Below, in pieces: positions 16,409-42,769 of a DNA stretch of 64,000 bases. The stretch comes from Paramoeba atlantica. Its lineage: Eukaryota > Protista > Discosea. The stretch covers positions 1 through 64,000 of the forward strand of contig CDRNVI010000027.1 in NCBI GenBank assembly GCA_977017575.1. The letters are read 5' to 3'. Every line of letters starts with the position of its first letter. The first letter of the stretch is position 1. The notes under the pieces are model-generated. The model worked only from the letters and a program-made list of their open reading frames with translations. It had not been told where the DNA came from and searched no databases. Both the position numbers and the translations under genes were made by a program.

Positions 16409-16910
16409 ATAGTCAGGGCATTCGACTTTTGTCGGATGATGGGGCGTAGCGACCCCAGCTTCCCTAGCTAACTCACCCGGCGTCGCACAACAAGACGCTA
16501 CATACCTAGGGTGGGTACGATCAAGGTCCCGAGGATGACACTACCCGGTGCCAGCAAAACAAGGCACAAAATAACTAGGGTAACGGTCACCCAGACATCG
16601 CAGCGTGAGAATGACACCGCCCGGTACCGGATATAACAAGGTACTAAGAAACTAGGGCGGGTGTCATTCAGCATAATCTTTGGAGTGTTTTTTCACTTCA
16701 AAAGAAGTGTTTTTTAATAAAGAATATTTTCTTGTAGTATATAAAAGGGGTTAAAAAAAGATAAGCTGGCTGCTCGCGCTCGATCTGGTCAAATCTTCGG
16801 ATTTCACTTGCGTGCTGCGTGGCACAGCTCCTAGCAAGCGATAAGGGGGGGCTTGTTCTAGGGAGGTAACATCTCCTCGGAGATATAATGCCTATTAATC
16901 AAAATCAAAA
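16409..16910 (+). mobile_element. About 500-bp SINE-like retroposon, copy 1
   Basis: 11-bp TSD ACCGGATACGT (16398-16408 and 16911-16921); splits the RT frame IIARIR|YLFVV; ATCAAAATCAAAA tail; near-identical to 24990-25485. Confidence 0.9.
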
Positions 16911-17169
16911 ACCGGATACGTGCTATTATGGCGTTCTGATAGATCCACAATTTTTCCCGGAGGTTATGTGCGCTGTTGCCAATGTTTTCTAACCATAGTT
17001 TTAATTTTATGTCGAGTTCCTTGTATAGGGATTTGGAAGCTTGGGCCCCGGGAGCGAGTTTCATGCCCAAAAATGTACTCCCTTTATTGCAGATGTGCGG
17101 AAGAGCATTTCCGCTAACCAGGATGTTCGGTCGTCTTGTCATGTACCCTGCGTTTTGCGAATATTCGTC

Positions 17170-17779
17170 CATAGACATGGAATGTACTAACATATGTCCA
17201 TAGACATGGACTGTACATGGACTGTACATAAAGATACAGTTTCTGTACCTTGTTGGTACATTTTGCTAGCCCTTCCTTTCTTTTCCCGGAAACGGGCATA
17301 CATTTTCCCTTTTAGTGCCCGTTTCCGGCTGACGACTAGCGGGAACTGTCCCTCTTTGTCGTGGAAGTAGGGGACGTACTTCCGACTTTTCACCCCTCCC
17401 CGGCTCACTCCTTGAGTGAGTTCTCTTCCCTCCCCGGCTTTCTTCTTCTCGCACCTGTCTCTTCCCGGGAGCTATGCGCCATGGTGGCCTCCCTTGAGGA
17501 CCACTGGGCGTGACTCTGCCACGCTTTATCGCGAGGCAGCGGTCGGTTGCAGTGCGCCCCTCCGGCTGCGTAAAGAGGTGGTGAGTTGCCTGGACCACCT
17601 CTACCGACTGGGACCGAGTCGGTTGCAGTACGCCCCTCCGGCTGCGTAAAGAGAGGCGAGTTGCCTGGACCTCTCTACCGACAGAGTCCGCGTCGAACCC
17701 CCTTTGGCGGATTATGTGCCGATGATATCGGCCGTCGCATTAAGGGGATTATCTCTGCGCCAAAGAGCGCATGATAAAC
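17170..17779 (+). mobile_element. Spliced-leader-headed, structure-rich non-coding insertion in the R2-like RT
   Basis: RT frame breaks at KFSLFIM (17780) and resumes at DEYSQNAG (about 17165); contains the SL-like 28-mer at 17228-17255 and tandem structured units at 17542-17682. Confidence 0.6.
17228..17255 (+). other. Spliced-leader exon-like sequence ATAAAGATACAGTTTCTGTACCTTGTTG followed by GTAC
   Basis: Carries the CAGTTTCTGTAC core of kinetoplastid/diplonemid SL exons; 27 of 28 nt identical to the copy at 63938-63965 (minus). Confidence 0.75.
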
Positions 17780-18517
17780 AAGCTGAACTTTGCGGCGTTT
17801 AGTTTCATTCCTAGCTTCTGCAACACGGTGATCAGTGCGTTCGTCGCGATTTGCGCTTCTACTGGGTTGCGGGTAATTATGGTCAAGTCATCGGCGTAGG
17901 CCTTTTGGAATATCTTCTTTCCCCCTGGGTGCTGTATGCCGCAGGATCTGAATGCTTCGCGCATGTACCTCAGTACGATTTCCATCACTATGAGGAAAAG
18001 GGTAGGAGACAGGGTATCCACCTGCAACACACCTCTGCAGTACTGAACTGACTCTGTTAGTCCTTCCCCGTGTTTTAGTCGTACGCTCGCGTCCTTGTAC
18101 ATGTGTTGCACGTATGATATGAGAGTTCGCGATGCTTTCGACCAGCGTAGTGCCTCTAGGATAATATTGTGCGGTACCGCCCCAAAAGCGTTTTGGAGAT
18201 CGAACTGGACCATGTAATATTGTGGTTTGTTTCGTCGTTGGTGTTCAAGAAGGTCACAGAGTGACTGTGTGTGCTCGATGGTTCCTTTGATCCCTGGGAG
18301 GAATCCTTTTTGTATTTCTGGGTCGAGTACTTTGGCGTGTAGCGCATGGTTGAGGAGTCTGTGCCCTAGAATGGTGTGGAATGCCTTTCCTACTGCACTA
18401 GTCAGGCATATGGGTCGCCAGTTCCGCGTGGAACTGGTCTCCCCGCCTTTGTGAATAAGCTTAATGATACCTGCTTTCCATTGTGATTGACAAGTACCAT
18501 GTTCCATCAAGTCGTTG

Positions 18518-18698
18518 AACCCAGGGCAAAGTGGACGAGGGAGATACCAATAGTTTAGGTGCGGCAGTTTCCACAGGACAAACAGCATCTCTCCCTTTTA
18601 AGCGCTTGTCTTCATGCCATAAGGGAGATACCGTTTTTCCTTTGGAAACTGCAGCACCTAAACTATTGGTATCTCCCTCGTCCACTTTGCCCTGGGTT
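18518..18698. repeat. 181-bp inverted-repeat (MITE-like) insertion, arms about 55 bp
   Basis: AACCCAGGGCAAAGTGGACGAGGGAGATACCAATAGTTTAGGTGC and its reverse complement ending at 18698. Confidence 0.85.
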
Positions 18699-20156
18699 AC
18701 GTAGGAAAAACATGTTCCCTAGGACTCCTTACAGCTCCCCACGCGAGGAAGTCGTCGTCGCTGCGGCAAAAAGGCAGAAGGCACAGCTTTCTGCTTTTTG
18801 CCTTGTGCCTCCTCCTTCCTCCACGGTCTTGCGTAACCCACATTTCCAGTTGAAAAAAGCATACATGTATGTGGCAAATTGGGGTTTGCAAATCGCTTCC
18901 GAAGAAGGGGGTCTCGAGTGGTCCAAAAGGTGCGTTTTTCTAAAACTATCGATTTATGGTGCTGCCTTTGGTTCTTTGCGAAAAACCATTTTCCGGAAAT
19001 TTTTTTGTCGGGCCAAATTTCGGGCCAAATTTATTAATATAGGATAGCGAGCGAGTACTATCTCCCTCAATATACTGGCCATTGTTTCATGCAGTATCTC
19101 GCAGTGTTTGAAAATTCGATGCAGTATCTTGGCCGGGGGCACTCCTGCTTCGTTTGCATTTCAGCGCATTTTCGACGTCTCCTTTTGTTATTGGTTCCCA
19201 TAACATAGTCTCCTTAGGGGTCGGTCCCAGAAGGTCTGTCGGTGGCAGTTGGTAGTCTTTCGCAGGGTTTTCGTGCTCGCGATTGAAGTGTTCTAAGATA
19301 ACGCTCGTCTCGCAGGTTGGATAGGCTTGAGTTGCGTTCCCATCGGCTTTGTCTAGTACTTCGTTAGCTGCCACCCAGGGGTTACGCGTGAATCGGTCAT
19401 GGGCTCGTCTCTTATCCATTGCATTTCTTTGGTGACTCGCCTCCTCGAGGTACACCTTTTCCGCTTTCCTTGCTTCTTTAATTTGTTCTTTAGCTCATTG
19501 CGCGGTCCTTTACCATGGGTAAAACGGAGAGATCGTTTAAGTCTTTGGATACTTTTTCCCAGTTCTCCTGCAGTTTTCTCGATAGCCAGGGGACGTGATT
19601 TGGCGTTGTTCTTTTTCCGATTTGCACGGAGGAAGAAGCCGTTCGTTGGGTCGGTTGCCATCGCCGCTTCATACGTTGATACAGCTAGAGCTGAGGTAAA
19701 AATGTTTGCGTTCAATTCTGCGGTTTTAGAATTTGTTGCTGGTCGGCATGCCATTTTGAAGAAGCGTTCATTTGTCTTGGAAGTAATTTCAAGGTAATGG
19801 GTGTCACGTAGTCTCGCTGTTATCCTACCTCCGTGGATCCTATCGTGCATTTCGGAAAGGTGTTCTCTTTCTCTTTGGAGAGAGTCATCTTGATTTCCAG
19901 CGGCTTCATTCGGTTTTCGCTTGGAGCATTCTCTTGGGTCGTTGTTGTTCTCCTGCGCCGGCCCGTAGACTTTGCAGCATTTGTGCCTGCAGTTCATTTT
20001 TTCCTTGCAGGGATGCCTACATAGTCCAATTTTCTGGTCATCCCATGATGCCGGGTGGTCTTCCTGTGCTGGTGTTGTGTCCGCTCCCGTCTCTGTGCTT
20101 TGCTCCATTGTTATCGTGTGGATCATAGTTTCGTGCTTGGTTTCTCCAGATTTCCG

Positions 20157-20949
20157 ATCATTTGGTGTGATGAGAAGCTTTTTCGGTGCGGTTGCCGCGG
20201 GAGTCGAACGTTTATTGGTCGCGAAAGCGACATCGACAAGTACTCGACCCCTGGAATGGACCGTTGGGTGGGGGGGGGGAAGGGTATTATGGTGTGGATG
20301 GGGGTAAGTCTCAGGTATGGGGGGTTCATCCACATTTTCGAAGAAGATTCATCTCTGAAAGGGAATAATTTTAAGAACGCAATGACAAAGCGTGGGGGTT
20401 TTCTTTCCTTTCTTAGGCGTCATTCTGCAGCTGTTGTTGTGATGGACAACGCAACTATCCACAACACAACACGTACTTATTTTAAGGAGCGCGGGGTCAA
20501 AATGTTGGATTGCCCCCCCAAATCTCCAGACATGACGCCTATTGAGAATTTATGGTCAGTGATGGATGCCATAAAATGTAGAAAAAAACCATTAAACCGT
20601 GAATTCTTAAAAGAATCCATCACAGCTTCTTACAATGAGCTGCTTAATGAAGTCGGTTTCGTGGAACGCACTCTAAAGAGCGTGCCAAACAGAATGCGTA
20701 TTGTTATAGAGAAGGAAGGGGGGCACTGTGGGTACTAGGTTTGTCATTTCATTTTTTTGCAAATTTCTAGAAAAATTTGCAATTGACGTTTTTAAGCCAC
20801 CTGCCATTTTAAAAAAATGGAATTTATCCGGTAACCGATATATCCTCCACAGGAGGGTTGTGTGAGATCTCTCGAATGCGCTATTATTTTCCAAAATTGG
20901 CCAAGTTTTACAAATTTTAGACCCCCCCAGCATTAGCTGATCCCCCCTG
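20157..20949 (+). mobile_element. 5'-truncated DD32E Tc1/IS630 element (transposase fragment to 20738, right TIR about 20865-20949)
   Basis: IIWCDEK, VMDNATIH, PPKSPDMTPIENLW; homologous to 33156-34268; TIR matches the 32929 family. Confidence 0.85.
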
Positions 20950-20954
20950 CATAT

Positions 20955-21775
20955 AATAGAAGAAAATTTAATAGAAGAAAAATATATAAAAAGGGCTCCG
21001 GTGGTCCAAAAATTTTCAAAATAATCGGGCCATTGGGGGCTCCAGGGGGGGGGGGTCCAGGGGGGGCATACCGCATGAATTTTTTTTGAAAAAAAATATT
21101 TTTAGAAAAAAAAGCGCGGAAGGGGTTGTCGGGGTTTCGGCACGCATTTTCCACCCCCCCACCCGGGGGTGACCACCCTTCGTATGCGCAGGACGTGTCC
21201 GACATGTTCGGGTTTTTTCGGGAAAAAAAATGAAAAAAAATTCAACTTGGCGAAAAAAATGGTAAAAAAAGTATTTTTTTCGAATTCCTTTCCCCTATTG
21301 TATTTTGTTAGTGTGGGGCCTATACTAGCTTTCTACGCCTTTGTTTTCGCAAGATATCCCTTCTTGTAGCCGTGGTATGCCTCCAAATATGACCCATTTT
21401 TGACCAAAAAAGGTGAAAATGTATTTTTCGGACCCCAAGGGATCTTTTTGTGTCCAAAGAATGGTGTGATTGGAGTCGTATTCTCTACCCAATACGTCCG
21501 GGAGGCTTTGACTCATGCCTAGGAGTGATTTCCCTAACGCGAATGTCGGATTTAGTGCTCTGAGAGCAAAATATCCAAAAATCACCCCATTTTTACCCGA
21601 AAATCAGCTGTTTTTGGCTATAATCTTTCCGTTTTCTCCAGCTTTCGAAGCCGAATTTTCTTTTTTAGTCTCCTCGTTAAACGCGGTGGTAGTTTTCAAC
21701 GCGAAGCGCGCAGCATGAGTGACTTCTAAGTTGAAAACAACCACCGCGTTTAACGAAGAGACTTTAAGGGGTAAA
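20955..21775 (+). repeat. About 820-bp non-coding interspersed element; inverted diverged copy at 55095-55990
   Basis: Shared GGGCTCCGGTGGTCCAAAA, G-run GGGGGTCCAGGGGGGG tracts and a terminal hairpin CGTTAAACGCGGTGG…CCACCGCGTTTAACG. Confidence 0.85.
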
Positions 21776-21923
21776 AATATCATTATGGGGTAAAAATAGC
21801 CATGGAAGAGAAAAATGTTTAGTTGTGCTTAATTTATTCTGAGCTAATTCCAGGGTATGTAGCTAGGTGCGTAACAGTACTTAAATTATATTGTTGAGAA
21901 TTCTGTTAATCATAGAGGTTTGA

Positions 21924-22394
21924 CTAAGTTTTCATCGACTTTCCTACAATTTTCCGAACGGTATAAGTCCAGACTCGGGTCGTACTGCATACAAGGCTAA
22001 GACATGTAGATGCAAACGATAGTGCTTGAATAAGACATAATATGCCACTGCGCCAAACGATCATCGTTTCAAGCACAAAAATTGGAGCGTCACTGAACAA
22101 AAGGTGTGCCAAAATACCATATACACACCGACGAACAACCAATCCAGGTGCAGATTCGTACCGATAGGCCCACGAATAACACGCTGAGCAAACTAAAGTG
22201 AACATAAGCACACTGGAGCACGTTGCTATCAAATATAAAAGTATCACAAAGGGTCCGATACCGGGGGTATTTTTTTGGTATTGTACCCAATCAACATAGT
22301 TTACTGTACACAAGCACGAATGCAAAAAATGTAACCAAAGCATTGCTTGAACCCCCAGACGACGTTGCTTGTGATCGATCCTCATAAGAATCAC
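21924..22394 (-). CDS. Small multi-pass membrane protein (156 aa), probable host gene
   Basis: Uninterrupted ATG ORF with about four hydrophobic segments; same strand as SHMT; non-repetitive context. Confidence 0.6.
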   Translation of the reverse strand: MILMRIDHKQRRLGVQAMLWLHFLHSCLCTVNYVDWVQYQKNTPGIGPFVILLYLIATCSSVLMFTLVCSACYSWAYRYESAPGLVVRRCVYGILAHLLFSDAPIFVLETMIVWRSGILCLIQALSFASTCLSLVCSTTRVWTYTVRKIVGKSMKT

Positions 22395-23018
22395 TTTTGG
22401 CGCTGGGATACCTCAACCAGAAGATTTGTACATACAGTCTTTTCTGGATATGCTAAATACATGTACTAGTATATAGAACCTTCCGTAATACTGCATTGTA
22501 TTTATTTGGTAAAACACGTTATTCATGTAAAACTCTGTCTTCTTTTCTTAGTCCACAATCATAGCTTGTCATATCTTGAATAGGCGTCCTATACATCCAA
22601 TGTTGGTTTTCCTATCTATGAATATTCTTAAATATCTAAAAACCACGAATATACATATCAATGAGCCATTCAGAATTTCATAAACTATCTAAAATAACAT
22701 TAGAATACAGGAAGTTTTTAACTAAATAGTTTATTGATTGCAACATCAAGTAAATCAAGTTCCTACTTCAGTGTATGTACGTACGACCATAAATAATATG
22801 TCCAGAACAAATTTTCGTAAGCTCAGCATATTTTTTTCTTCTATTACTATGCCAAAATCATTCCTTTCACTATTTTATGCATGTATGCGCATTTTCATCT
22901 AGTTGAGTTTCACGGTATTCTGCACAAATTCTTGTGTATAACAAACCATATAAAGATCAGTTAATATTTTGTTGTATTACTCCATCACAAGAACATAGAA
23001 CTTTTGTAGAGATCTAGT

Positions 23019-24416
23019 TCATACCTCTGGTACATGATCACGATATTTCATCCCGTCAATACTGAAACCTGGGATTGGATACTGACCTGCAAACCCTTCC
23101 ACATCATTTCGAAGACTCTCTATCTCAGCATTCTCGGATAGCTTGGCTACAAAATCAACCAATCGTTTGCCAGCACGGAGCTGAATGTCCAACGCAATCT
23201 TCACGGCGCGTTCCATAAAGACGGCAATAAGTCTCATTTCCGCTTCTTTCATTCCTCGAGAAGTAAGCGCTGGTGTCCCAATGCGAACACCACCTGGAGA
23301 AGCAGCACTTTTATCACCCACAACAGTGTTTTTATTTATGCTGATCGATGATTTTTCTAGTATCTTCTCATATTTCGAACCTGTCAGGCCTAGTGGACGT
23401 AAATCCCAAAGTAGTAAGTGATTGTCAGTCCCACCGGTAATCAACGTATAACCTTTATCTATCAAAGCTTTGGACAGCTCCTGAGCGTTGCGAATGATTT
23501 GGCGACTGTACTCCTTAAAATCTTCTGTGGCTACCTCTTTCAACTGTACTGCAATGGCAGCGATAACATTTTGATGGGGACCGCCTTGAAGGCCAGGAAA
23601 GACTGCCATATTGATCCGCTGAGCAAAATTAGTTGAGTTACCATCGCGCCCGAGCTTACGGTAAAATATCATGCCAGCTCTTGGTCCACGAAGGGTTTTA
23701 TGAGTTGTTGTAGTCACTATGTCACAATGTGTAAAAGGAGAGCGCAGTAATCCGCTGGCCACCAGACCTGAGACATGCGCCATATCACACATTAACAGAG
23801 ATTCTGTTTTGTCCGCAATTTCCCGAAATCGTCCGTAGTCAATATCGCGTGGGTAAGCGGATCCACCGCAAATAATTACTTTTGGAAGGTATATTTCAGC
23901 AATTTTCTTCAATTCTTCGTAGTCAATGATTCCATCAGAATCAAGGGAATACGGAAGCGATTCAAAAAATATTGAGGTCGCACTGATTCGCTTTTTAGCT
24001 GTATAGTAGCCATGTGTAAGATGTCCCCCCGCAGGAAGATCCATACCCATGATACGGTCATGTGGTTGTAAAAGGCCAGTGTACACGGCGAAATTGGCCG
24101 GTGATCCAGAATAAGGTTGAACATTGACCCCCCACTCCTTCGCATCCAAATGAAATGCCTCCAACGCACGTGATTGGCACAGTCCTTCGATTTGGTCAAT
24201 AAATTGTGTTCCTCCGTAATATCTAGCTCCGATCTCCCCTTCAGCATACTTATTAGTTAGATGTGAACCTAAACATTCTAGCACTGCTGATGAAGTAAAG
24301 TTCTCGGACGCAATCATCTCCAAACCGAAGTACTGCCGCGCTTTTTCTTTTTCAAGAATGTCATAGACTGCGGAATCTTGCTCTTGTAACAGTCGATTTT
24401 GGGGTAACTTTTTCAT
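23019..24416 (-). CDS. SHMT: Serine hydroxymethyltransferase, eukaryotic type, intronless
   Basis: [15 protein letters not shown]…[26 protein letters not shown]-lysine motif [32 protein letters not shown]. Confidence 0.98.
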
Positions 24417-24705
24417 TAAGGCAAGAAAGATATGGGTAAAGAAGGCTTCAAAAATTCATGAAAAAATAATAATACAGCAACGTTAAAAAATATCTCACTG
24501 TTATGAAAAAATATTTTGTTGAGTGATTATCTTTGAAATGAAAGACCTGCGATTTTTCTTAACTTCAAGAAACTGATTTCAACGATGAGAAGTGACTCGT
24601 CCGATGAGGCTTCCGAGTACAGCTCTTTTGACTCTTCTTCCTCCTCCTCCTCCTCCTCCTCTTCTTCTTCTTCTTCCTCTTCTTCTCCTTTTTTCTTCTT
24701 CTTCT

Positions 24706-24737
<32 letters not shown>

Positions 24738-24868
24738 CTCTTCTGTGTGTGAGTGTGAAACAGATGAAGATTGGAGCCCCTCTGATTTTTCTGAGGATTC
24801 CTTCACGAGCGACGAGGAACCGTTTTTACTTCCCGACATACGTTACAGGCTCGAGGGGATAAAAAAAT

Positions 24869-26112
24869 CAGGGGGAGGGGGGGGGGGCGTTCGATGAGTA
24901 CTCACCGAACGGGCAGCCCGTTCGATGAGTACTCACTGAACGGGCAGCCCCTTCGGTGAGTAATTTGCAGAACCAGTCAGGGCAGAATCAGTCAGGGCAT
25001 TCGACTTTTGTCGGATGATGGGGCGTAGCGACCCCAGCTTCCCTAGCTAACTCACCCGGCGTCGCACAACAAGACGCTACATACCTAGGGTGGGTACGAT
25101 CAAGGTCCCGAGGATGACACTACCCGGTGCCAGCAAAACAAGGCACAAAATAACTAGGGTAACGGTCACCCAGACATCGCAGCGTGAGAATGACACCGCC
25201 CGGTACCGGTTATAACAAGGTACTAAGGAACTAGGGCGGGTGTCATTCAGCATAATCTTTGGAGTGTTTTTTCACTTCAAAAGAAGTGTTTTTTAATAAA
25301 GAATATTTTCTTGTAGTATATAAAAGGGGTTAAAAAAAGATAAGCTGGCTGCTCGCGCTCGATCTGGTCAAATCTTCGGATTTCACTTGCGTGCTGCGTG
25401 GCACAGCTCCTAGCAAGCGATAAGGGGGGGCTTGTTCTAGGGAGGTAACATCTCCTCGGAGATATAATGCCTATTAATCATCATCAATTTGCAGAACGAC
25501 CCGTTCGAAGAGTACTCATCGAACGGGACGCCCTGTTGCTTGAGAAAAATAATTTGCTGCAACATTTTGGGGGGAAAACGTGCATTAAACGCGCGTCATG
25601 GAATTCAATCGACTTGAGGAGGCTGTACAGAAACTGAATCTTTACGGCAGATCGCTGTATTCGTACCCCCCTTTTCAGCTCACAGTTGGGCCTTGCCTCT
25701 AGACAGGTAAACTAGGTGTCGCAGCATAGGAAAACGAGTTCACAATCCTGCGGAAGTTCCAGACATAGGTTCTCAGTGCGCGACCCGCGCGCTCCAAAAA
25801 ATATAATTATGTCCCAGGGCTACGCTCAAAGTTGGGCCTTGCTCGCAAACGGGGGCTTTTGCCTCCAGAAGTGGGCTACGCTCACAGTTGGGCTTTACCT
25901 CCATACACATAAACTAGGACGCAACTGTCGCATCTGGAAAAGCATTAAACGTTCTTTTTGTGGTTGACCGTCGATTCAATGAATTACTCACGGAACGGAC
26001 AGCCCATTCCGTGAGTCTCATCGAACGGGACATTACTCACCGAAGGGGCTGCCCGTTTAGTGAGTACTCATCGAACGGCTGCCCGTTCGGTGAGTAATCA
26101 TCGAACGCCCTG
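24869..26112. mobile_element. hAT-like non-autonomous TIR element (CAGGG…CCCTG ends, about 75-bp subterminal inverted arrays)
   Basis: Repeated CGTTCGATGAGTACTCACCGAACGGGCAGCC at left and its inverse at 26035-26107; flanking 8-mers AAAAAAAT/GCCAAAAT match only 5 of 8. Confidence 0.7.
24974..25485 (+). mobile_element. About 510-bp SINE-like retroposon, copy 2
   Basis: 12-bp TSD AATTTGCAGAAC (24962-24973 and 25486-25497); (ATC)n tail; short 5' duplication CAGTCAGGGC. Confidence 0.92.
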
Positions 26113-26289
26113 GCCAAAATCAGTTCCAGGTGAGCCAGAAGCATCACACTACTCTTCACCCTCATCACTATGGTCTTCCGAATCAACGGCGTCGTTTTAT
26201 TTAGCTACTGTAGAGCCGGAAGCGTCTGTAAGTTACGACGCTTAAGTACATGTATCGGACAATGTGATGATGGGCATATCTATTGATTA

Positions 26290-26625
26290 TAAGGTCGGGG
26301 CGTCCGATTAACACCGGACGATGGGACTTAGCGATCCCAGCCTCCCGAGCTAAGGCCGGCGCTAGCAAAACAAAGCGCTAAATAACTAGGCCCGTTCAGG
26401 GCACTGGTCGTCCCACCGGGATCGCTAGTGAACGAGTGCGTCCTCACTCAACGTCCCTTGATGAGTCCTCGGTGGTGAGATTCTGACGCCTGTACTCTTC
26501 CGGAAACGGAGAGGATGCTCAGCCCCACTTAAAAAGACACTCAGGCCGACGTAGAGGTATCTCTGTAACGGAGATTCCTGCTACGATCCCATAGCCCTAG
26601 TCGGCCAAACGGGATATCTTATCTT
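26290..26625 (+). ncRNA. Putative structured RNA/SINE-like segment carrying motifs 1, 2 and 3
   Basis: Diverged copies of three motifs found in other elements plus several perfect hairpins; ends in TATCTTATCTTATC; no clear TSD. Confidence 0.4.
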
Positions 26626-26849
26626 ATCAGGAGCTGGTGCACGGTGGGGGAAACAAGGGAGTCTTCCTCTGGGGTGAAGGGGGGCATAGAGGGGGTATGT
26701 TTATGGGCTGGTGGGTTGGGTTGGGACAGAGAGATATGGCTCCCTAGTTTCAGCCTAGGTGCGCTGTGCGGATGCCGATGCCCGAAGCATCTGTCCCGAC
26801 ATGAGAGTACCTCAACCATAGAAGGCACACATCCGACTTATCCCCCTAT

Positions 26850-27110
26850 AAGCCAATAATTACAGCTCCAGGGTAGGAGGGGTTCGCTACTCCCCAGCGT
26901 GGTTTAACAAGTTAATCCACGACCCTGCCTTAAATTTTTTGTGGATACTAGCCTAGTTTCTTGACGTCTTGTTGTGTTGACGCCGGGTAGATCCACACCA
27001 TGGGCGCGGCGGAGATCAAGGCGGGGAGCGAGGTGGGAGTGAGGCGGTTGGACAGCGGGGAGGGCAGCAGGGAGCACGGGGGGAACGGCGTCGGGGTTTC
27101 TTTTTTTTTT
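26850..27110 (-). repeat. Inverted homolog of 30750-31045 (GC-rich tract, motif 1, motif 2)
   Basis: CTACCCGGCGTCAACACAACAAGACGTCAAGAAACTAGG…GGGGAGTAGCGAACCCC on the minus strand. Confidence 0.8.
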
Positions 27111-27452: not shown

Positions 27453-27603
27453 AAAGGGGGTATTAAATAAAAGGAGGTATTAAACGAAAAGGGGGTATTA
27501 AACAAAAAGGGGGTATTAAACAAAAAGGGGGTATTAATCAAAAAGGGGGTATTAAACAAAAAGGGGGTATTAAACAAAAAGGGGGTATTAAACAAAAAGG
27601 GGG
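27453..27603. repeat. 18-bp minisatellite (AAAAAGGGGGTATTAAAC); further units at 28058-28085 and 29748-29866
   Basis: Visible tandem units. Confidence 0.93.
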
Positions 27604-28082: not shown

Positions 28083-29747
28083 GGGCGTTCCACGAGCACT
28101 TCCGTGAGTTTTTGAGACACTTCGATGATTTCTCATCGAAGTGCCTACGTGTCACAGGGTGACTCATCGAAACGTCAATCTTCTCATCGAAGGTGATTTT
28201 AATTGCTTTGGAAAGAAAAAAATCGAGAACATGAAAATAAGAAAGCGGCGACACTGAGAATCTGTGTCTGCCACTTCCGCAGGTTTGTGTATTTGTTTTC
28301 CTATACTACGACACCTAGTTTACGTGTCTGGAGGCAAGGCTCAACTTTGAGCGAAGCCCACTTCTGGAGGCAAAAGCCCCCGTTTGCGAGCAAGGCCCAA
28401 CTGTGAGCGTAGCCCTGGGACAGAATTATATTTTTTGGCGACCCGCGCGCTCCAGCGCGCGGGTCGCGCACTGAGAACCTATGTCTGGCACTTCCGCAGG
28501 ATTGTGTATTTGTTTTCCTATACTGCGAGACCTAGTTTACGTGTCTGGAGGCAAGGCCCAACTTTGAGCGAAGCCCACTTCTGGAGGCAAAAGCCCCCGT
28601 TTGCGAGCAAGGCCCAACTTTGAGCGTAGCCCTGGGACAGAATTATATTTTTTGGCGACCTGCGCGCTGGAGCGCGCGGGTCGCGCACTGAGAACCTATG
28701 TCTGGCACTTCCGCAGGATTGTGTATTTGTTTTCCTATACTTCGAGACCTGGATGACACTACCCGGTGCCAGTAAAACGAGGCACTAAATGATTAGGGTG
28801 GATGTCATTCTGGCAACGTAGAATGGGTGGCACCGCCCGGTACCGAATATAACAAGGTACTAGGAAACTAGGGTGGGTGCCATTCGGGCTAATCTTTGGA
28901 ATGTGTTTGTGTTTTTTTTATCCACCCTCAAAAGATAGAGTGGTTTTTTTTGGTCAAGGGGCGCCTTATTTGCATTACCTAAGGCGCAGGGGTATAGCGC
29001 ACCTCACCTCCCTAGCTGTAACCTAACTCCTCTCCAAGCGGAGGTCAGCCGTAGCTTGCTATGGCTGGCTCTCCGGATACGTCGCAAGACGTATTCGGAC
29101 TGCCCGTTTGGGGAGTTGAGGGGCCATAACTTTTCGGAGTCAAAAGGCCCAATACACCATCATCATCATCATACTGCGAGACCTAGTTTGCGAGCATGGC
29201 CCAACTGTGAGCGTGGGTTTATCTGTATCTGTAGGTTGCGAGCAAGGCCCAACTGTGAGCGTAGCCCACGTTTTTCCCTTCGAACGGAGTTCTACACCAC
29301 TTTGTAGCTCTCGTGATAAAAATTACTAGGCTGTTCTATTTTACTTTGGTTTCGTCCCTTCTTTTTAATGAATAACAGTCAAGCGGGGAGTACACGCGAA
29401 GCTCTTTTGAATAGTTTTGTGCGTTTCGTAGACAGCGAAATGCGTCGCACTCAAGAACAAGAGGAAGAAGAAGAGTTACCTCGCACTCCAGAGGAATTAC
29501 GAACTCCTGGTGCCTGGGCTGACAGACTTATTTTTAGCCCCTTGGTTGGGGCCGAAGCTGCTGCACGTACTTTGCTTCCGTCAGTTCGTGTATGTCCAGG
29601 TTGTGCTGAGTTTGCTCCCGAGTCGAAAATGCAGCTACCACCTCAAAAGTAATTAAAATCACCTTCGATGAGTTTCTTTCGTTTCGATGATTTTCGTTTT
29701 GACACGTGGGTGTTTCGATGAGTACTCACGGAAGTGTCCTCGTACCC
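28083..29747. mobile_element. TIR element related to 24869-26112, inserted in the 18-bp array; contains a 217-bp tandem repeat
   Basis: 28090-28210 is an inverted homolog of 29645-29745 with TCATCGAA repeats; internal units start near 28266, 28483 and 28700 and match 25700-25900 in reverse. Confidence 0.7.
28751..29170 (+). mobile_element. 420-bp 5'-truncated SINE-like retroposon with a different 3' half
   Basis: 14-bp TSD ATACT(T/G)CGAGACCT (28737-28750 and 29171-29184); (ATC)n tail; two motif-1 copies homologous to the 16.5-kb SINE. Confidence 0.88.
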
Positions 29748-30487
29748 AAAGGGGGTATTAAACAAAAAGGGGGTATTAAACAAAAAGGGGGTATTAAAGA
29801 AAAAGGGGGTATTAAACAAAAAGGGGGTATTAAACAAAAAGGGGGTATTAAACAAAAAGGGGGTATACGGGCAAAGGGGGTACGGCGTCAGGGTGCACGC
29901 CGGGGCGCACGACGGGGAGAACGGCGGGGCGCACGACGGGGAGCACGACGGGGCGCACGGCGGGCTGAACGGCGGGGCGCACGGCGGGGAACACGGCGGG
30001 GAGGGCGGTGGGGAGCACGGCCGGCAGTCTGCGAAAGGCGCGGTGAAGGGGGGGTGAAGGGGGGAAGGGGTACATGGGGTAGATAGGTCTTAACAAAAGT
30101 CAACAACAAGCAACAAGGTACAGAATCAAAACAAGAACAAGGTACCAGATGGGCTGGTGGGTGGGGCAGAAAAGTCGACAAGGTACCAACAAGGTAGCGG
30201 ATTTTATACCCTTGTAAAGATGAATTACCCTGTTAAAATGTAAAAAAAAAAATTTCCCAAGATCCATTTTATAATGTAAATTACTTCAACACACCCGTCA
30301 AAAATCTTCAGATCGATCTCTCTTACTGTTTTACCCCCCTGTATAGTCACTTGCCTCAAACGTATGTAAGGCGCGATCGACCGCCAAAATTTCCGGTTTG
30401 TTTATTTCATAGGGTTCTTCCCATAAGCTGCCTGTGGCTGTCATTGGGTCTATTGAAGGGAATAATACTGCGCCCCTTGTTGTTGTG

Positions 30488-31222
30488 TGTACCTTGTTGG
30501 GTTCTGTACCTTGTTGATTTGTCCCCCCCACTGCTATTTCCATTGTCCCCCCCGCCGCTCTCCCCGCCGCGGGGAGACCCCTCCTGGACGAAAGAAGAAA
30601 TCGCCCTCCCGCACCGTCCTCCGGGTCGCCCTTCCGGTTGCCCTCCTCGCCGCCCCCCATTATGACCCCTTTGCCTGCCGCGCTCCCAGCCGCGCTCCCA
30701 GCCGCGCTCCCAGCCAGGTTCCTCGCCGCGCATCCCGCCGTCCTTCCCGCCGCCCTTCCCGCCACCCTTCCCGCCGCCGTTCCCGCCGCTCTTCCCGTTC
30801 TCCACATCGCTCTCTCCCTCCGCTGCGCTATTTACTGCGCTCCCCGCCCCGCTCCCTCTCACCGGCCTCTTCCTTGTCTCACTGTCCCATGTTGTGGAGC
30901 TACCCGGCGTCAGTAAAACAAGACGTCAAAAAACTAGGGTAGTATCCACGCAACAATTCAAATTTAGGCAGGGTAGTGGATTAACTTGTTAAACCACGCT
31001 GGGGAGTAGCGAACCCCTCCTACCCTGGAGCTGTTAATTATTGGCTTCCTTCATTGGAGGATAATATTGGAAAACTAACTCCTCTCCAAGCGGAGGTCAG
31101 CCATAGCAAGCTATGGCTGTCTCTCCGGATACGTCGCAAGACGTATTCGGACTGCCCGTTTGGGGAGTTGAGGGGCCATAACTTTTCGGAGTCAAAAGGC
31201 CCAAATCATCATCATCATCATC
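30488..31222 (+). mobile_element. SINE-like mosaic: SL relics, GC-rich repeats, motifs 1 and 2, 3' module shared with 29025-29170, (ATC)n tail
   Basis: TGTACCTTGTTG twice at 30488-30516; 31075-31222 nearly identical to 29025-29170; boundaries and TSD not resolved. Confidence 0.55.
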
Positions 31223-34468: not shown

Positions 34469-37342
34469 TATGTAGCATGGGAAATTCTTGTGCAATTGTC
34501 TCCAGTATTGGCTGAAGAAAGGAGCAGAAGTATAGAGTCGACAACGGCGACCCTTGGCGAACTCCAGCCGAACTTTCAACTGTTGAAAACAGTTCCCCGT
34601 TCTTTCCGTAAAAGAGGAGTTCAGACGCTGTCCCATATTCGGCAAAAAATAGTCGCTGAAAAGGCCGAAGGGCGCTCAAAGCAAAAATTGCTTTTGCAAT
34701 CTCGCCGCGTGAAGGGCTATTAAAAGCGTTCTTCATATCCAACGAGAGGATAGCACACCCTTCCATATATCGTCGATTGAGTTCGTGAACAATAGTCTCG
34801 CAGCCAGCGCGACTCATTACCCCATGCTGCATCGGCAGGAAAAGCTTTTCAAATTTATGTTCGTTACGCAGAAGGATTAGTCCAGCCAACTTGAGAAAAA
34901 TTTCTCCCATTGCCACCGGTCGAACGGCTTGAGCTGTTTTAGGGAGTGCAACTAAGCGTGCTCTCCGCAGTCTGCGCATTACATCCTTGGATAGCATTCC
35001 GTTAATTAAATCGCACATCATGTGGCTTAGACTCGTGCAACAGATCTCATCGTCCAAGAGCAGACGAATGATGGCCTCTGTGGTACCGGATGGACCTGGG
35101 GCGGCGCCTTTTGCGAGTCTCTTTCCTGCTTCTCGGAGTTCATGGGGCGGGATACATGCTACCTTCGGGGCGTCGGTGGGAAGCTCAAAAGAAATCGGTA
35201 AAGATGGGTGTAGTTTTTGTAATTGAGACAATTTTTCTTCATCCCCTAATGATGTTTCGGTGATGTCTTGATCTAACACGCGCGTCGCTTTCTTAATCGC
35301 TCCTTCCAAAACCAGTCGGGTCGCTTTTTTGCCTGCTCTCAGATCTTTAGCCTTTTGCTCCACTTCACTGTTTCCTGCGTTCGTCTCCTGAGTTTGAATT
35401 GGGCGGCGACGACGCTTTTTTCCAATGAGATGGCGCACTGTAGCTAACGAATGTTTCATTGCCGACATGGTTCTGTGCCAGATTTGATTTCGTTGGTCGT
35501 AAGAAGAATCTGCGTAATCCCGCATTATGTCACGATAGATAGAGACAACACAGGGCACAAACTCTGCACTGACAGTCCGCATGGTTGGCATTGGATCGAA
35601 ATCCAAGTCTGCTTCCGTATGAGAAAATCCTTGATTACTTGGAATTCCTTTAGCGTCCACATCAATGCTGCTTTTTGAATCCTTTCGATTTAGCCATTGT
35701 ATTGAATAAACTCTCACATTAGAGTTTGGAGGAATGAACCCACAAAATTGCTCGCCGCATTTGTACCCTTCTATACCTTCGTACTGGAGAGACATCCGTC
35801 CGATTCCGGAACGCTTCTTAACTGACTTAACCACACCTTTCGATATATTTATCTGCGAGGAATCGCTGAAGCACCATGCCATCAAGCACGAGTCCCCTTG
35901 TTTCGCCGTTTTTGATGAATCCCAGATGGTATCCGGTGCCAGTGGAAACTTCTCCGTTGGGTTTATCGACTTATTCAACTTCTCTATCATCTCGGCCTCC
36001 TTGGCAACTTCTATGACAGACTCTGTTTCAGCAGGAAGTTCAAAGTTCGGCATCGTGATATTGTTTTCGTCAACTACCTCGTGCAGTGTCGTAGACCCGT
36101 CAACCCTTCCCGTGCTCAATGGGGTGTCCTCAGGAGTTAAATAGTCGGCGTATGTCTGACATTCGACATCTGCGTCCTGCGTCGGCTGTTCGGCTGAAGT
36201 TTCATCATTCGTCGCAGTGATCGACTCAGTCGTCGTAGTGCCTGGCCAAACGACGCTTGCCTGAGACTCGGTATTGACGTCCTGCATCCCTAACGTTTGT
36301 TCCGCTGAAGATTCTGTATTTATCGTAGTGATCGGGAGGCAATCTAACTTTGATATCGTTCTTCTTTCTTTTCCTCGAGCGGTTTCTGCAATTTGGCGTT
36401 CCCTTGTCTCACGCTCCTCGGCTGTAGGAACACCGTGCAGTGTCAGCAGCCCATTCCACAGTCTTTCCGACCACTCCAGCAACCTTACCGAGTGTTTGAA
36501 GACGCGAAGATGGTTCAGAGTGGGGAACTTCATTACTTGAGCTTATCGTTGTGTGATTTTCTTGTCGCTGTTTTCCAATGATCACTTTTATGCGAGGTTT
36601 GCGTGAGGGGATTGCCGTTGTTGTTGTTGTTGGGTCCGGGCCGTTTGTCTCCGAAGAGATGTGGCCTCCTCACTTTCCGCGTAGGTAGCGGTGCGGGTGC
36701 TCCACGCGGGGAGTAAATCTACAGTGCGAGAGCCTAGGCTCAACCGCAGCATGTAGACACCCGACTTGCCTCCTCCGGGAGAATGAGGTGTCATGCCCTA
36801 GTTGTTTAGTGTCTTGGTATCTTGACACCGGGAGACCCATGCAAAGCGCGTGGCGATGGGGGTGTTGGCGAGGGCGGCGCACCGGGGCGAAAAGGGAGGC
36901 CAATTTATGGTATTAACGTAAATGAGAGCCCTCGCCTAATTTCATAACGTAAACTTTCAGACAACAAGGTACAGGGGTAGAGGGGATTGCCGTGGTCACT
37001 GAGTCTTCGCACTGCCTACGTGACGTTTCAGCTGCTTTCTCTTTTATTTTCTTTTCTTCCTCTGCGCGTGCGTCCAACTGCTTTTTCAACTCACTGAATG
37101 ACATGCGAAAATTTCTTTCTGTATCATCTTTTCCGGTCGGCAGCGGGAGTAGACTGGGGAACCTAAGCTCTATTGCGTTTTCGGCCGACGAGGAATCTGC
37201 TGGAGGAGACTTCGTCGCCGGAGGGGACGATGGCGATGGCGGTACTGCTGATTGCGCCTGCGACCGATAAGGTTGTTGTTGTTGTTGTTTAACCCGTTTG
37301 GCCATGACTGGCTATGGGTTCAGAGTACACCCTAGTTATTTA

Positions 37343-39054
37343 CACCCCCGTTCCCCTGTTTTGCCCGGTATTATGTGATAAAAAAAAGTTTCTATTTGGG
37401 TCTAAAGAGTGGTTTTTCGGCATAATTAGGTGATGCCCTACCAGGGAAAAATATGCCTATAGTTAAACAGCATGCGATAAACGTGGGAGGAAGGGCAAAA
37501 ATCTGAGAATTTGCTCATCTGGGCAGTGAAAAAAATCCTGTGAGGCTTTTCAAAAAATCTCATCTTCAAGTAAAATAACTCGGTTTGATAGGAAAGGCAG
37601 ATCCGAGGAGTCTGCAGGCCATCCTGGGAGAGTGTGAGAGCCTCCTCTTTGGTTTAGGTGGGGGAGATTTCATCATCAAAGCTCGTGTCTTGTCAAAAGA
37701 CGTGTCATCTCTGAAAGAAGAACATCGAAAAGAAAAAGAATTTTTTTTTTTTTTTGAAAATTTTGTCAAAGGCAGACGCGGTTTTCACAGAGATGCAAAT
37801 ACTTAAACATGTTCCTCTGAACTAAAACTTGCAGAAAATTGCATAATTTCTATCGAAATACTAAAGTGGATGAAAGATTCACTGTAGTATTTCAGTAAGG
37901 GCTCTTCTTTCCTCCATACAAAATAACCATTTCCATTCGTTTTTTAAAAGTACGGTGCAGTTTATAACATTCCTTCCGACAAACAGGAGACTTCAAGTAT
38001 CGATCGCATACTTCCTTTATTTCACTCACGGTATTTGGTCTATGTTTATTCTTGTACAGCTTGAGAATACTCCAGAGATTTTCTATTGGGTTTAGATCCG
38101 GGGAGTCTGCTGGCCATCTTGGGAGAGTCTGAGCACTCTTCACCTCTTTACAAAGCCGCAGAGCCTCAACCCGGGGATGAGATTTCCACCAGGCGATTGT
38201 TAGTATGGCCTTGTGCCCAGGCGCGTTATCGTCCATAAAAATTTTGTTTCCTATCTTCTCCCACGGAAGATACGTCTTTTGCAAAATGCATTTCAAAAGA
38301 TTCACCTTCCTCCCTCATATGACCTAGGGAAGCTGCATACGCTTCGACGCCCTTTTCTTCGCTCCAGTTGTCCTCAACAATCGAGGAAGTACAAGATACG
38401 TCGTCACTTTCTGTATCAGAAAAGTCGGATGCTAAGAGAGGAAGGTCTGGAGGATTTCCGACAGGAGGAGAAGCAACCACAGGTGAAACGAAGAATGTTA
38501 AATCACCCTCGACAGGAGTATCAGGTGGTACCGAAGAAGAGGAAACAGAAAGATGAAGCTCTGAGGAGATGAAAGAATCTGATAGTGGAGGGGTCAAGGT
38601 AGGCAACGCATCCTGATCTCGGTCGCATAAAAAATATCTCCCGCTCTGAAGTTGGATCAATTCGCCAGAGCGAACTAAATCTTCAAGGGATAAAGAACTT
38701 GGGTGACGATTGTGCATTACTAGTAAAATATTATTAATAAAACGAAGGAGTCTTAAAAACGCAGTATTGTTCATAGAATAAATAATCAGGACATTTCAAA
38801 AGAGAAATGGAAGATAGAAGTATACATAAATTGTGGTAAAATAACCTAAAAAAACAAAAAGAAATGCAATTTGTTACTGAAAAACGTGGAAAAAACGAAC
38901 CTTTTTTTCTCAGTCACCACAGCTGAAACAAGGGGTGAAAAACGCATTTTTTACACGCTCTGGCGAATCATCTACGTACTTGGCTGAAAAAATTATTCGA
39001 AAAGCTCGTCTGGTGCGCTCAATCAATTGCGGGCAAAAAAGTGGAACAGGGGTG
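37343..39054 (-). mobile_element. 1712-bp Tc1-like element with a truncated DD48E-type transposase (37892-38305) and an unrelated Ser/acidic ORF (38226-38774)
   Basis: TA|CACCCCCGTTCCCCTGTTTTGCCC versus inverted CACCCCTGTTCCACTTTTTTGCCC|TA; IFMDDNAPGH…WPADSPDLNPIENLW; first catalytic D region absent. Confidence 0.85.
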
Positions 39055-39404
39055 TAGTGCTCGTGTGAAACGGCACCGGGTATTACCGTACTCCGTGGGT
39101 GGTACGCTGTCAGTCGCGCGCAGACTTTCCCAGTGGGATGCCGCACTCGCAGATAGACAAGCAATACCTGTCAGGTTGCGTGGTCTGACTTGTCATCCGT
39201 GACTTCAATGCCCGATGGATTCGAATCCTGGGGCAAAGAAGTAGTGGAACAGTCGTTATATTCTGTTCCACCACCAGGGATGACTCACGCTAGGGTGTGT
39301 GGAGCTTGCGAGGCTCTCTCACCAGCGGGGCTCACAATGGAGCTCGACCAGTGCCCTTCACAATTTAAATTTTTGCATATGGAGACTACCCTAGTTTCTT
39401 AGCG

Positions 39405-40137
39405 AAATCAACGTCTTCTCTCCCCTGCATCATAATGAAAGTAAACCATGTTAAAACCAATTTTCCTAGTAATATATCGCTTCAATGAAAGTTTCCGTCC
39501 AATCATCCCGACCATTTTTTGTTTCCAATAAACTATATCTATCTGACGAATTATCAAGGTATCTGGCCAATATAATAAAAACAATCACAGAAACCCAGTC
39601 AACAATTCCTCAAACTTACGAACGGGCATCCCGTCCACCAACTCCGCGAAATGGTTGGGGGTTGGTGGGTGGGCGCAATTTGAAAAGGGTAAAAGAAGGA
39701 GTGTCGCTATACACAAAAACAATATATATTACTTCATCCCGAGTACTACTAAATTATAAATCTCATTACATCTAACAACGGGTGCCCCTTTCGGGGCCAC
39801 AATCTGCAAAAACAAATCATAATATAAATATTATGTGCCCCGAAGGGCCATTATGTCAATCATCCTAAATTTCTAAACGTATACTTCTAGAAATCAACGT
39901 CTTCCCTCCCCTGCATCATAATGAAAGTAAACCATGTTAAAACCAATTTTCCTAGTAATATATCGCTTCAATGAAAGTTTCAGTCCAATCATCCCGACTG
40001 TTTTTAGTTTCCAATAAACTATATCTATCTGACGAATTATCAAGGTACCTGGCCAATATAGTAAAAACAATCACAGAAACCCAGTCAACAACTCCTCAAA
40101 CTTACGAACGGGCATCCCGTCCACCAACTCCGCGAAC
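39405..40137. repeat. About 245-bp direct duplication (39405-39655 and 39888-40137); part homologous to 27770-27850
   Basis: GAAATCAACGTCTTC…CCACCAACTCCGCGAA repeated. Confidence 0.9.
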
Positions 40138-40319
40138 CAACCCGTTCGCCCGTAATCCAAACTCCCGCACGTGTTTGTAGCAAATGGTGGCGGCCAATTA
40201 CTAAAAACTCGTAACGTTTTTCAAGAATTCCTACCGCGTAATGAAATTGAATAGTATATATTTTCTATATAGCTAATTTTTTTTTTTTTGATTCTATATA
40301 ATGAGTTTTACTAATTAAT

Positions 40320-41100
40320 GGTACATTCATACCTATGCGAGTTTCCATACATGTATGTATACATGCTTATCCGGTGCGGCTGATAGGGTCCGCTGGGTTT
40401 TCGGCAGATCTCACATAACGTGCCATGATACATACGCCAAGGTTCTGATTTGTCTTCAACACACGCTTGAGCTCTCCGGCAATACTGTCGGATTTCGCGA
40501 TCTTGCGGTTGAATGCTGCTTGGCAAGAGGTGTTGCCAATAAACTAATCAACACAGGTTCCTTTTTGAAAGTGGTGTGTCAGTTTTTCAAACGCAAGTCG
40601 AACGGCCATCGCCTCAGCGTGATTCACTTCGTATTTGAACTCAGGTTGCCATTTATCGCCAACAATAATCACTTGTCCGTCGTCCCGGTAAAGAACCGCG
40701 CCCCATCCTTTAGCTGACGCATCCGTGTACAGTCGGTGTTTATGCGGGACAACGTCAGGATGCGGAGGTGGTCATATAGGCTCATTTACCAAAATGATAT
40801 CACGCCAATTCGCGAGAATCGATCGGGTGGCTGTCGGAAGAGGAACCGGTTGATGTGCGAGTTCGGGGCATCGGTTTAACTCATTGATACGTCGTCTAAC
40901 AATCTTTAAGGGGAAATGATAGTCTGGAATAATATGACCCAAGACCGCTGCTGCATAGAGGAGGAGCCCCACCGCCGTCTCCAATTGAGAGTACGTAATA
41001 TTACGAAACCGATCTCGTGACATTTTCCGTATAACCCTAGGCCCCAGGTTGACCTTATGGGTTACGTGATTGTAGAAGACGCCGTTAAAAACATATTCAG
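40320..41100 (-). pseudogene. DIRS/VIPER/TATE-type RT-connection and RNase H remnant
   Basis: LETAVGLLLYAAAVL, then LYTDASAKGWGAVL, NHAEAMAV and YVRSAENPADPISR read manually on the minus strand. Confidence 0.8.
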
Positions 41101-42359
41101 TGGAGGGGTCAAAACCAGCCTCCTTGAACAAACCACGGCGGGGAGCGCGGCGGCGGCGACGCATGGGGTAGCTCAAGCTCCCTCCCCAAGAGGGGGGGCG
41201 AAACAGGTCGCGGGAAGGGCGACGCAGCAGGGTGGAGGGGACGGCGAAGGGGGCGGCGCTAGGGGGTGAAGTGGGCGGCGGAAGGGGGGCTTAATTTCCC
41301 CAGGGGTGAAGGGGTGCATGGGGGAAATTGATGGGGGTGCATGGGGGAAATTCAACAAGGTGTGCTGTGTGATCCTCCGTATCTCCAGATGCAGCGGCTA
41401 TTCCATCGTCAAATGGCGGAGACCCGAGAGATCGACCGGGCTCCCCTCCTGTTTCCGGAATTTGCACGTCTGCAGAATTCAATGCTGCACCGGACATGGC
41501 GCTTGATGCCGTTCTTATAGCATCAGCTGCGACAGCGCACGTTCTTTTGGCAAGTGGCACTGTAGGAGTTTGTATTCTCGACCGATAAGGTGTGGATGCG
41601 CAATGCAGTGAAGGCGATGAAGGCCGCAGGCCGGGCGATGGTTGCGAGCGTAGTGCAGAGGAGGATGGTTCAGGTTTGGTGATTTGTCTGATGTTGGCGG
41701 CGGAGGCGGCGGAGATCGCACCTCGGTTGCTTTCTTCTTTCGCCGGGTGGAGGGGAGAGGCAAAATTTCGGGAGATACTCCCGATTCCTTCGCCTTAGAG
41801 CGGGTGACCACTCCCATGGGAAAGTAAGAATAAAGGGGATATAAAACAAAAAGTCAACAAGTCAACAATGAAATATACTTGAAATATACTTGTATTCCCC
41901 ATGTGCCCCTTCACTCCTATCCTTGGAGACCTTCTCGTTTTTTTTAAACTATCCAGGGTGTCATAGAAGGAGGTTTTCTTGACCCTTTCTTTTGTTAAGG
42001 GGGGTGGACTTTATAAGCTTTTTCCTATTTGGGTATCTATAGATATTATGTATATAATAATACATATTGGCATTGAACAAACGAAACTATGTTGATACGT
42101 TTGGCTCAAATGCTGTACCTATTCGCGTAAGGAAAGTTGCTATGACTTCATCGACGCGTTCTTTACGGAATTTACGGAGTGTGTCACCCGGTGCAGACGA
42201 GCTCGCGCCTACCGAGACGCTGCCTGCACAGGCTTTGAATCAACTATGTACGGTTGTGAGAGAAAAGTTACTTGTTGCTCAAGGTGAAAGACCAAGTGTA
42301 AGAGTTCGTGCGGTATTTCGCAGGAAGGATGAACCGAACGAGCCCACACAGATGCTGTT

Positions 42360-42735
42360 AAATTGTGAAGGGCACTGGTCGAGCTCCATTGTGAGCCCCG
42401 CTGGTGAGAGAGCCTCGCAAGCTCCACACACCCTAGCGTGAGTCATCCCTGGTGGTGGAACAGAATATAACGACTGTTCCACTACTTCTTTGCCCCAGGA
42501 TTCGAATCCATCGGGCATTGAAGTCACGGATGACAAGTCAGACCACGCAACCTGACAGGTATTGCTTGTCTATCTGCGAGTGCGGCATCCCACTGGGAAA
42601 GTCTGCGCGCGACTGACAGCGTACCACCCACGGAGTACGGTAATACCCGGTGCCGTTTCACACGAGCACTAAATAACTAGGGTGTACTCTGAACCCATAG
42701 CCAGTCATGGCCAAACGGGTTAAACAACAACAACA
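42360..42735 (+). repeat. Inverted, uninterrupted copy of the 5' region of CRE element A
   Basis: Reverse complement of 39056-39365 joined to 37280-37342. Confidence 0.9.
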
Positions 42736-42769
42736 AATGCTGTACCTACTGCTGCCTTCCGGGGATAAG

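What the first reader, a model, noticed from the sequence alone, without database searches (positions are those of the whole stretch)
16472..42686. Motif 1: a covarying RNA module in about 14 copies, tandemly arrayed in SINE heads and CRE 5' regions (candidate new ribozyme or RT-recognition element)
Seen: consensus NCCC-G-G[NGYC]-R(N)n-ACRA-[GRCN]Y-WAANAA-CTA-GGGN. Copies: 16472, 16534, 16608, three at 25051-25248, 26353, 26945 (minus), 28752, 28826, 30900, 36790 (minus), 42645, and a Tc1-split copy at 37330/39056. The inner stem swaps compensatorily (CGTC/GACG, TGCC/GGCA, TACC/GGTA, TGTC/GACA, CGCT/AGCG), the outer stem covaries, the 7-nt spacer before CTA is nearly fixed, and G-U pairs favour the sense strand. 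Known: R2 and L1Tc/ingi elements carry 5' HDV-like ribozymes. This motif lacks hammerhead, HDV, twister and pistol cores as far as I can see. Speculative: the loop/stem AACAAG(GTAC) is antisense to the SL 3' end.
Basis: partly seen in the sequence, partly recalled or inferred. Interest (0 to 1): 0.85.

Follow-up and report, generated by a model that had tools for sequence, protein, structure and literature searches.

The report
Bulged RNA hairpin shared by SINEs
Several families of short, non-coding jumping elements in a Perkinsela-like protist carry one to three copies of an uncatalogued bulged RNA hairpin kept by paired mutations; it is probably a docking site that helps them get copied rather than a self-cutting RNA, and its unpaired parts unexpectedly match the leader sequence that starts every mRNA in the cell.

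Summary
The module is real: 13 intact copies, one split by a TIR element and one extra half copy. It folds as a 12-bp or longer helix with a 9-nt A-rich 3' bulge and a 9-11-nt A-rich loop; 8 of 12 pairs show double-sided changes, and there is no Rfam match. The context was misread: all intact copies lie in short tailed retroposons (about six families); the 'CRE 5' region' copy is a SINE inserted there (14-bp TSD, empty site found). One further copy, also in a SINE head, and none in any LINE in about 190 kb of LINE-rich DNA. A self-cleaving ribozyme is unlikely: modules sit mid-element, and full-length copies keep the sequence on both sides. Best reading: a position-independent protein-docking domain that aids retroposition, like a SINE central domain. 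New here: both conserved unpaired segments are complementary to the spliced-leader 3' end in one register (p about 0.007 against shuffled SL), suggesting origin from antisense SL or, less likely, two-point SL pairing. The scan noted what reads as the same hairpin on other contigs; the LINE 3'UTR link reported there I could not reproduce.

The parts
16409..16910 (+). SINE family A, about 500 nt, 11-bp TSD, (TCA)n-like tail, three tandem modules
16471..16516 (+). module A1
16533..16591 (+). module A2 (core 16542-16582)
16609..16669 (+). module A3; loop, stem and bulge give 17 bp of complement to the SL exon with a 2-nt bulge
24974..25485 (+). second family A SINE, 99% identical, 12-bp TSD; modules at 25050-25095, 25121-25161, 25196-25239
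26354..26392 (+). module in family B SINE (about 26285-26628, (TCTTA)n tail; 5' end uncertain)
26947..26990 (-). module in family C element (88% like 30886-31047); loop and bulge both fully SL-complementary while the stem is not
28751..29176 (+). family D SINE (A-like modules 2 and 3, different 3' half, (CAT)n tail, 8-bp TSD); modules 28759-28801 and 28833-28876
30899..30943 (+). module in family C element, downstream of SL fragments at 30475-30516
36619..36979 (-). family E SINE: SL remnant head, (CAA)n tail, 14-bp TSD, inserted in the 5' region of a CRE-type LINE; module 36796-36832
   Evidence: empty site L006:4704-4728
37327..37342 (-). 3' half of a family F module split by a TA-duplicating TIR element (37343-39054)
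39054..39083 (-). 5' half of the split module
39385..39404 (-). unlisted truncated module (3' half only) at the 5' end of the split family F copy
42359..42736 (+). family F SINE with B-box-like segment and (CAA)n tail; module 42643-42685, about 40 nt before the tail
17228..17255 (+). 3' part of the spliced-leader exon, the reference for the complementarity (not part of the module)

Best explanation
The module is a shared internal RNA domain of short non-autonomous retroposons. Shown: a long hairpin whose stem is free to change as long as it pairs, while a 9-nt bulge, a G-U/G-C pair at the bulge junction, the stem length above the bulge and the ACRA loop end are fixed; it occurs in 1-3 copies at varied positions in families with different heads and tails. 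Inferred: it is transcribed as part of the SINE RNA and folds into a binding site for a protein (the partner LINE's ORF protein or a host RNP or ribosome factor), raising the chance that the RNA is captured and copied by target-primed reverse transcription; tandem copies add avidity. Priming itself is directed by the separate 3' stem-loop and microsatellite tail. The module may have begun as a fold-back of a sense and an antisense spliced-leader fragment, which would explain the SL complementarity.
For: Covariation and fixed unpaired bases; strand bias matches the tail-defined sense; position and copy number vary, as in SINE central domains and the Alu SRP9/14-binding domain (PMC4758252; 10.1101/2024.12.16.628748); no cis pseudoknot partner in a constant register; separate 3'-terminal stem-loops next to the tails; family A is multicopy in three runs; SL fragments, some in tandem and on both strands, are abundant (PMC5601477 suppl. 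1.3 for Perkinsela).
Against: No binding protein is identified and no LINE carrying the module was found: none in CRE arrays, an R2-like element, or RTE+RNase H 3' ends. Transcription rests on one contig in a run only guessed to be RNA. Only 12 distinct copies from about seven lineages, so covariation counts include shared ancestry.
Confidence: 0.55

Rival explanations
1. Two-point spliced-leader trap. The loop end pairs with the last 5-6 nt of the SL exon and the bulge pairs with the AGUU(UCU) segment 5 nt upstream, with the upper stem acting as a ruler; the topology equals an H-type pseudoknot formed in trans. This would tether the SINE RNA to SL-capped RNAs (including SL-headed LINE mRNAs) or to the SL RNP, or close a 5'-3' loop in cis.
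For: Ten conserved unpaired positions are SL-complementary in 11-12 of 12 copies in one register; score 69 against shuffled SL p=0.007 and genomic 36-mers p=0.0003 after register scan and lineage collapse; reverse complement of SL scores 35. A3-type copies form 17 bp at -21 kcal/mol. Copy 26945 keeps 6+7 complementary bases although its stem has changed. LINEs here are SL-headed.
Against: Post hoc test on A-rich versus U-rich sequence. Most copies offer only 5+4 weak pairs (-1.1 and -0.1 kcal/mol); cofolding finds no stable binding with stems intact (it cannot model pseudoknots). Bulge positions 4-5 mostly mismatch, and invariant A2 and A10 are unexplained. The clearest SL-headed SINE (36790) has one of the poorest matches. 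SINE target sites are not SL sequence. Descent from an antisense SL fragment explains the match without pairing.
Confidence: 0.15
2. The module is a piece of the 3'UTR of a canonical RTE LINE, carried into SINE bodies by recombination and recognised directly by that LINE's ORF2 (a more specific form of the best explanation).
For: Earlier scan notes report such a link (unchecked leads). A second, canonical RTE family exists in the assembly (L016:17776-18810; window 51406-51509). Microsatellite tails and 7-14-bp TSDs fit RTE-type mobilisation (own knowledge).
Against: I could not see that family's 3' end; the RTE+RNase H copies with complete 3' ends (L007, L012/L013, L016) finish with a small hairpin and microsatellite and lack the module.
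Confidence: 0.15
3. RNA stability or retention element (exonuclease block or poly(A)/triplex-type protection) that raises SINE RNA level.
For: Compact conserved fold with A-rich strands suited to A-minor contacts; position-independent; tandem copies.
Against: ENE elements use U-rich internal loops on both sides, which the sense strand lacks; no Rfam hit.
Confidence: 0.08
4. New self-cleaving ribozyme class.
For: Conserved unpaired core with covarying stems; a twister-like ribozyme occurs elsewhere in the window; very small internal-loop ribozymes exist (PMC11620745).
Against: Internal position in full-length copies, with 68-288 nt retained upstream and three modules in a row; no known core; a one-sided bulge lacks the two-sided loop of twister-sister-like ribozymes; one contig of the possible RNA run spans all three modules (weak).
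Confidence: 0.05

Closest known systems
SINE central domains (CORE, V/Vhc, Nin, Snail; PMC4758252)
   Same: Internal domain shared by SINE families with different heads and tails; Vhc is a 40-nt hairpin with an internal loop; function unproven
   Different: No sequence relation shown; here structure rather than sequence is conserved, it is tandemly multiplied, and the host is a kinetoplastid
Alu 5' domain binding SRP9/14 (10.1101/2024.12.16.628748)
   Same: About 46-nt structured domain of a SINE RNA that promotes capture of a LINE RT in trans
   Different: Alu derives from 7SL and has a known ligand; this module has another fold and no known ligand
Stringent LINE/SINE 3' stem-loops, ZfL2/UnaL2 (PMC4176376)
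   Same: Stem-loop read by a retroposon protein through stem shape and loop sequence
   Different: Those are 3'-terminal; here a separate stem-loop fills that position and the module is internal
Pr77 / HDV-like ribozymes of L1Tc, ingi, NARTc (PMC12278014)
   Same: Kinetoplastid retroposon RNA element shared by short elements
   Different: Pr77 is 5'-terminal and catalytic with a nested double pseudoknot; the module has neither position nor fold
preQ1-I riboswitch and pistol A-rich linkers (from memory)
   Same: A-rich strand ending in ACUA after a 5-6-bp stem
   Different: No cis pairing of that strand with the loop; no Rfam hit

Membership tests
Rfam RNA families (all 4227) | CM match at or near gathering score | tested here: not met
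   No hit on any copy at E<=5 or E<=10 in 16400-16920
HDV-like retroposon ribozymes (R2, L1Tc Pr77) | Located at element 5' end, nested double pseudoknot | tested here: not met
   Internal positions; no constant pseudoknot partner
Hammerhead / twister / pistol / hatchet / hairpin ribozymes | Conserved catalytic core nucleotides and topology | tested here: not met
Twister-sister-like (lantern) ribozymes | Two-sided 5+6-nt internal loop with cleavage at a CA | tested here: not met
   One-sided 9-nt bulge against PMC11620745
Any self-cleaving ribozyme | Site-specific cleavage in vitro | not testable with these tools
   Needs a bench assay
preQ1-I riboswitch | 3' A-rich tail pairs back with the hairpin loop | tested here: not met
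   Loop-bulge complement 1-4 nt, no constant register
SINE central domain (as a kind) | Internal segment shared by short retroposon families with different heads and tails | tested here: met
   Families A-F
SINE central domain (CORE, V, Nin, Snail members) | Sequence homology to the named domain | not tested
   No SINE library available
SINE in the strict sense | Pol III head derived from tRNA, 7SL or 5S | tested here: inconclusive
   No tRNA found; one B-box-like match in family F; some heads are SL remnants
Stringent LINE 3' recognition stem-loop | Adjacent to the 3' tail | tested here: not met
   Module 40-400 nt from the tail; another stem-loop lies there
Stringent LINE 3' recognition stem-loop | Shared with the 3'UTR of a partner LINE | tested here: inconclusive
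   Absent from CRE, R2-like and RTE+RNase H copies examined; canonical RTE 3' end not available
CRE element 5'UTR | Present in uninterrupted CRE copies | tested here: not met
   Empty site in L006; none in CRE arrays L003-L007

The most novel reading that the evidence does not exclude
Retroposon RNAs carry an anti-spliced-leader aptamer: a hairpin whose loop and bulge grip two segments of the SL exon in a trans pseudoknot, letting non-coding parasites dock on SL-capped LINE mRNAs or on the SL RNP to obtain reverse transcriptase or a cap.
Probability: 0.13. Interest if true: 0.8.

Novelty: new variant of a known kind. Interest (0 to 1): 0.45.

Why it matters
Internal SINE domains are widespread but their function is unproven because they are conserved as sequence and give little structural handle. 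This one has clear covariation, a 45-nt core and a named candidate ligand, so binding and retroposition tests are direct. If it pairs with the spliced leader it would be a new way for a genomic parasite to exploit trans-splicing; if not, it is still an uncatalogued RNA family from a poorly sampled kinetoplastid lineage.

Tried and rejected
Pattern scans of metagenome, viral and prokaryotic collections: no true match (two chance hits rejected), so no homologue outside this organism. Search for a partner LINE: three homologue searches, three cluster look-ups and all 12 contig look-ups gave about 190 kb from the same assembly (ENA ERZ24900291; L012 and L013 overlap) with one more module, in a family A SINE head (L011:8728-8769), and none in LINEs. 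DNA-level roles (Helitron end, cruciform): rejected by G-U strand bias and lack of terminal position. Opposite-strand ENE-like reading: rejected by tail orientation and folding. Cis pseudoknot: rejected. SL-gene target selection: TSDs are not SL sequence. Idea that family A is a retroposed SL intron (Perkinsela has a 468-nt intron): no SL exon adjoins any of three A heads and the SL gene was not in my data, so unresolved but unsupported. The split copy was examined as two halves; it was not joined for any search.

Full report
Organism. The window holds an intronless SHMT whose best relatives are Perkinsela and other prokinetoplastids at 68-71%. A transcript of it begins with the leader end GTTTCTGTACCTTGTTG, joined at a TG acceptor; Perkinsela uses TG in 26% of cases and has hundreds of SL fragments (PMC5601477). 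The host is therefore a Perkinsela-like kinetoplastid (inference). The window is dense in CRE-type, R2-like, DIRS-like and Tc1-like elements (clades judged from motifs, no tree built).

The observation. A descriptor finds 11 perfect copies against 0.9 by chance. A covariance model gives 13 intact copies and a clean gap in score; nhmmer adds a split copy and an unlisted half copy. On 12 distinct copies, 93% of cells pair, 8 of 12 pairs change on both sides, and both shuffled and slid controls are far lower. RNAalifold reaches the same fold. The copies fall into about seven lineages, so these counts include shared ancestry, but the upper stem takes six different paired sequences. The fold is one helix: lower stem ending CC/GG, a G-U or G-C pair, five more pairs, a 9-11-nt loop ending ACRA, and a 9-nt 3' bulge AANNAACUA. 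G-U pairs outnumber A-C 15 to 5 on this strand, the same strand on which the carriers end in microsatellite tails.

Context. Every intact copy sits in a short non-coding element; most have a recognisable tail and four have 8-14-bp TSDs. Families differ in head and tail: A (triple), D (double), B, C, E, F (single). The module lies from nt 69 of 502 to nt 289 of 378. The copy said to be in a CRE 5' region is in family E, inserted with a 14-bp TSD; another CRE copy shows the empty site. The split copy is identical to family F at 42359-42736. About 190 kb of other contigs from the same assembly, mostly LINE arrays, gave one further module, in a family A head. RTE+RNase H elements with complete ends finish in a small hairpin and microsatellite without it. 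A second, canonical RTE family is present only as a fragment, so the LINE 3'UTR link reported in earlier scan notes remains untested by me. Family A is far deeper than neighbouring DNA in three runs, and one contig from a run guessed to be RNA spans its three modules; this does not prove transcription.

Ribozyme. No Rfam family matches. Known cores are absent and the twister-sister-like loop geometry is not met. More telling, efficient cleavage inside a SINE RNA would remove its 5' part, yet full-length copies keep 68-288 nt upstream and up to three modules.

Relation to the spliced leader. The match continues: in A3-type copies AACAAGGUAC, a 2-nt bulge, then AGAAACU pair with the SL exon end for 17 bp. 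Across copies the last five loop bases and bulge positions 3 and 6-9 are SL-complementary in 11-12 of 12, in one register, while the stem between them covaries away from the SL. With registers scanned and one copy per lineage, the SL scores 69; 0.7% of shuffled SLs and 0.03% of genomic 36-mers reach that, and the SL reverse complement scores 35. The test is post hoc. The geometry would be that of an H-type pseudoknot in trans (inference). Against it, most copies offer only nine weak pairs, cofolding shows no stable complex with stems intact, and the clearest SL-headed carrier has one of the poorest matches. Descent from an antisense SL fragment, later fixed for another interaction, explains the data as well.

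Mechanism. Shown: selected RNA fold, sense strand, shared by several short retroposon families, variable position and number, distinct from the 3' terminal stem-loops. Inferred: a protein-docking domain that improves capture of a LINE reverse transcriptase (0.55), specifically a piece of an RTE 3'UTR (0.15), an SL-pairing device (0.15), a stability element (0.08), a ribozyme (0.05).

Comparison. It works most like SINE central domains (PMC4758252) and the Alu SRP9/14 domain, and less like 3'-terminal LINE stem-loops or Pr77. It is a member of none as tested. No copies were found outside this organism, and four literature searches on these topics returned no description of it.

Verdict. A real, uncatalogued RNA domain of a known kind of element. 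What reads as the same hairpin was noted by this scan on other contigs. The correction of the CRE context and the two-segment SL complementarity are what this report adds. Interest 0.45.

Noticed in passing
window 16410-16472, 24990-25050, 26294-26356; L011:8661-8729; L012:5768-5843(-): A second conserved two-hairpin structure heads families A and B and an element without the module; family A copies start at the same base. No Rfam match; candidate promoter, processing or 5' ribozyme element.
   Followed up: partly
window 16863, 25442, 29120, 31172, 36668(-); 26588, 37318(-), 42694; L007:5220(-): Two kinds of bulged 3'-terminal stem-loop next to the SINE tails; likely priming signals; no LINE with the same end found.
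   Followed up: partly
window 6575-6664 (+): Twister-P1-like sequence with intact core, E 0.004, below gathering score, beside a 25-bp tandem repeat.
   Followed up: no
window 17228-17745: SL exon end followed by GTAC and about 490 nt with twin three-way junctions (17542-17695). The length recalls the 468-nt Perkinsela SL intron, so it may be an SL gene copy rather than only an SL-headed retroposon.
   Followed up: no
window 24450 (-), L002:1-30: SHMT is trans-spliced at a TG acceptor, as often in Perkinsela.
   Followed up: partly
L007:5634-8069, L011:10001-11730, L012:10001-12300, L016:10001-12590: Several RTE-like LINE families with C-terminal RNase H and very short 3'UTRs; a canonical RTE fragment at L016:17776-18810 and window 51406-51509. 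RTE is not among the four clades listed for trypanosomatids (PMC12278014).
   Followed up: partly
L012:6286-6340: Extremely 5'-truncated insertion: little more than a (CAA)n tail between 19-bp TSDs, ending like family E.
   Followed up: no
window 9319-14611: 5.3-kb (TATC)n array.
   Followed up: no
L003, L005, L007, L011: Many CRE-type LINE copies begin with a near-complete SL exon, often after a poly(A) run.
   Followed up: no
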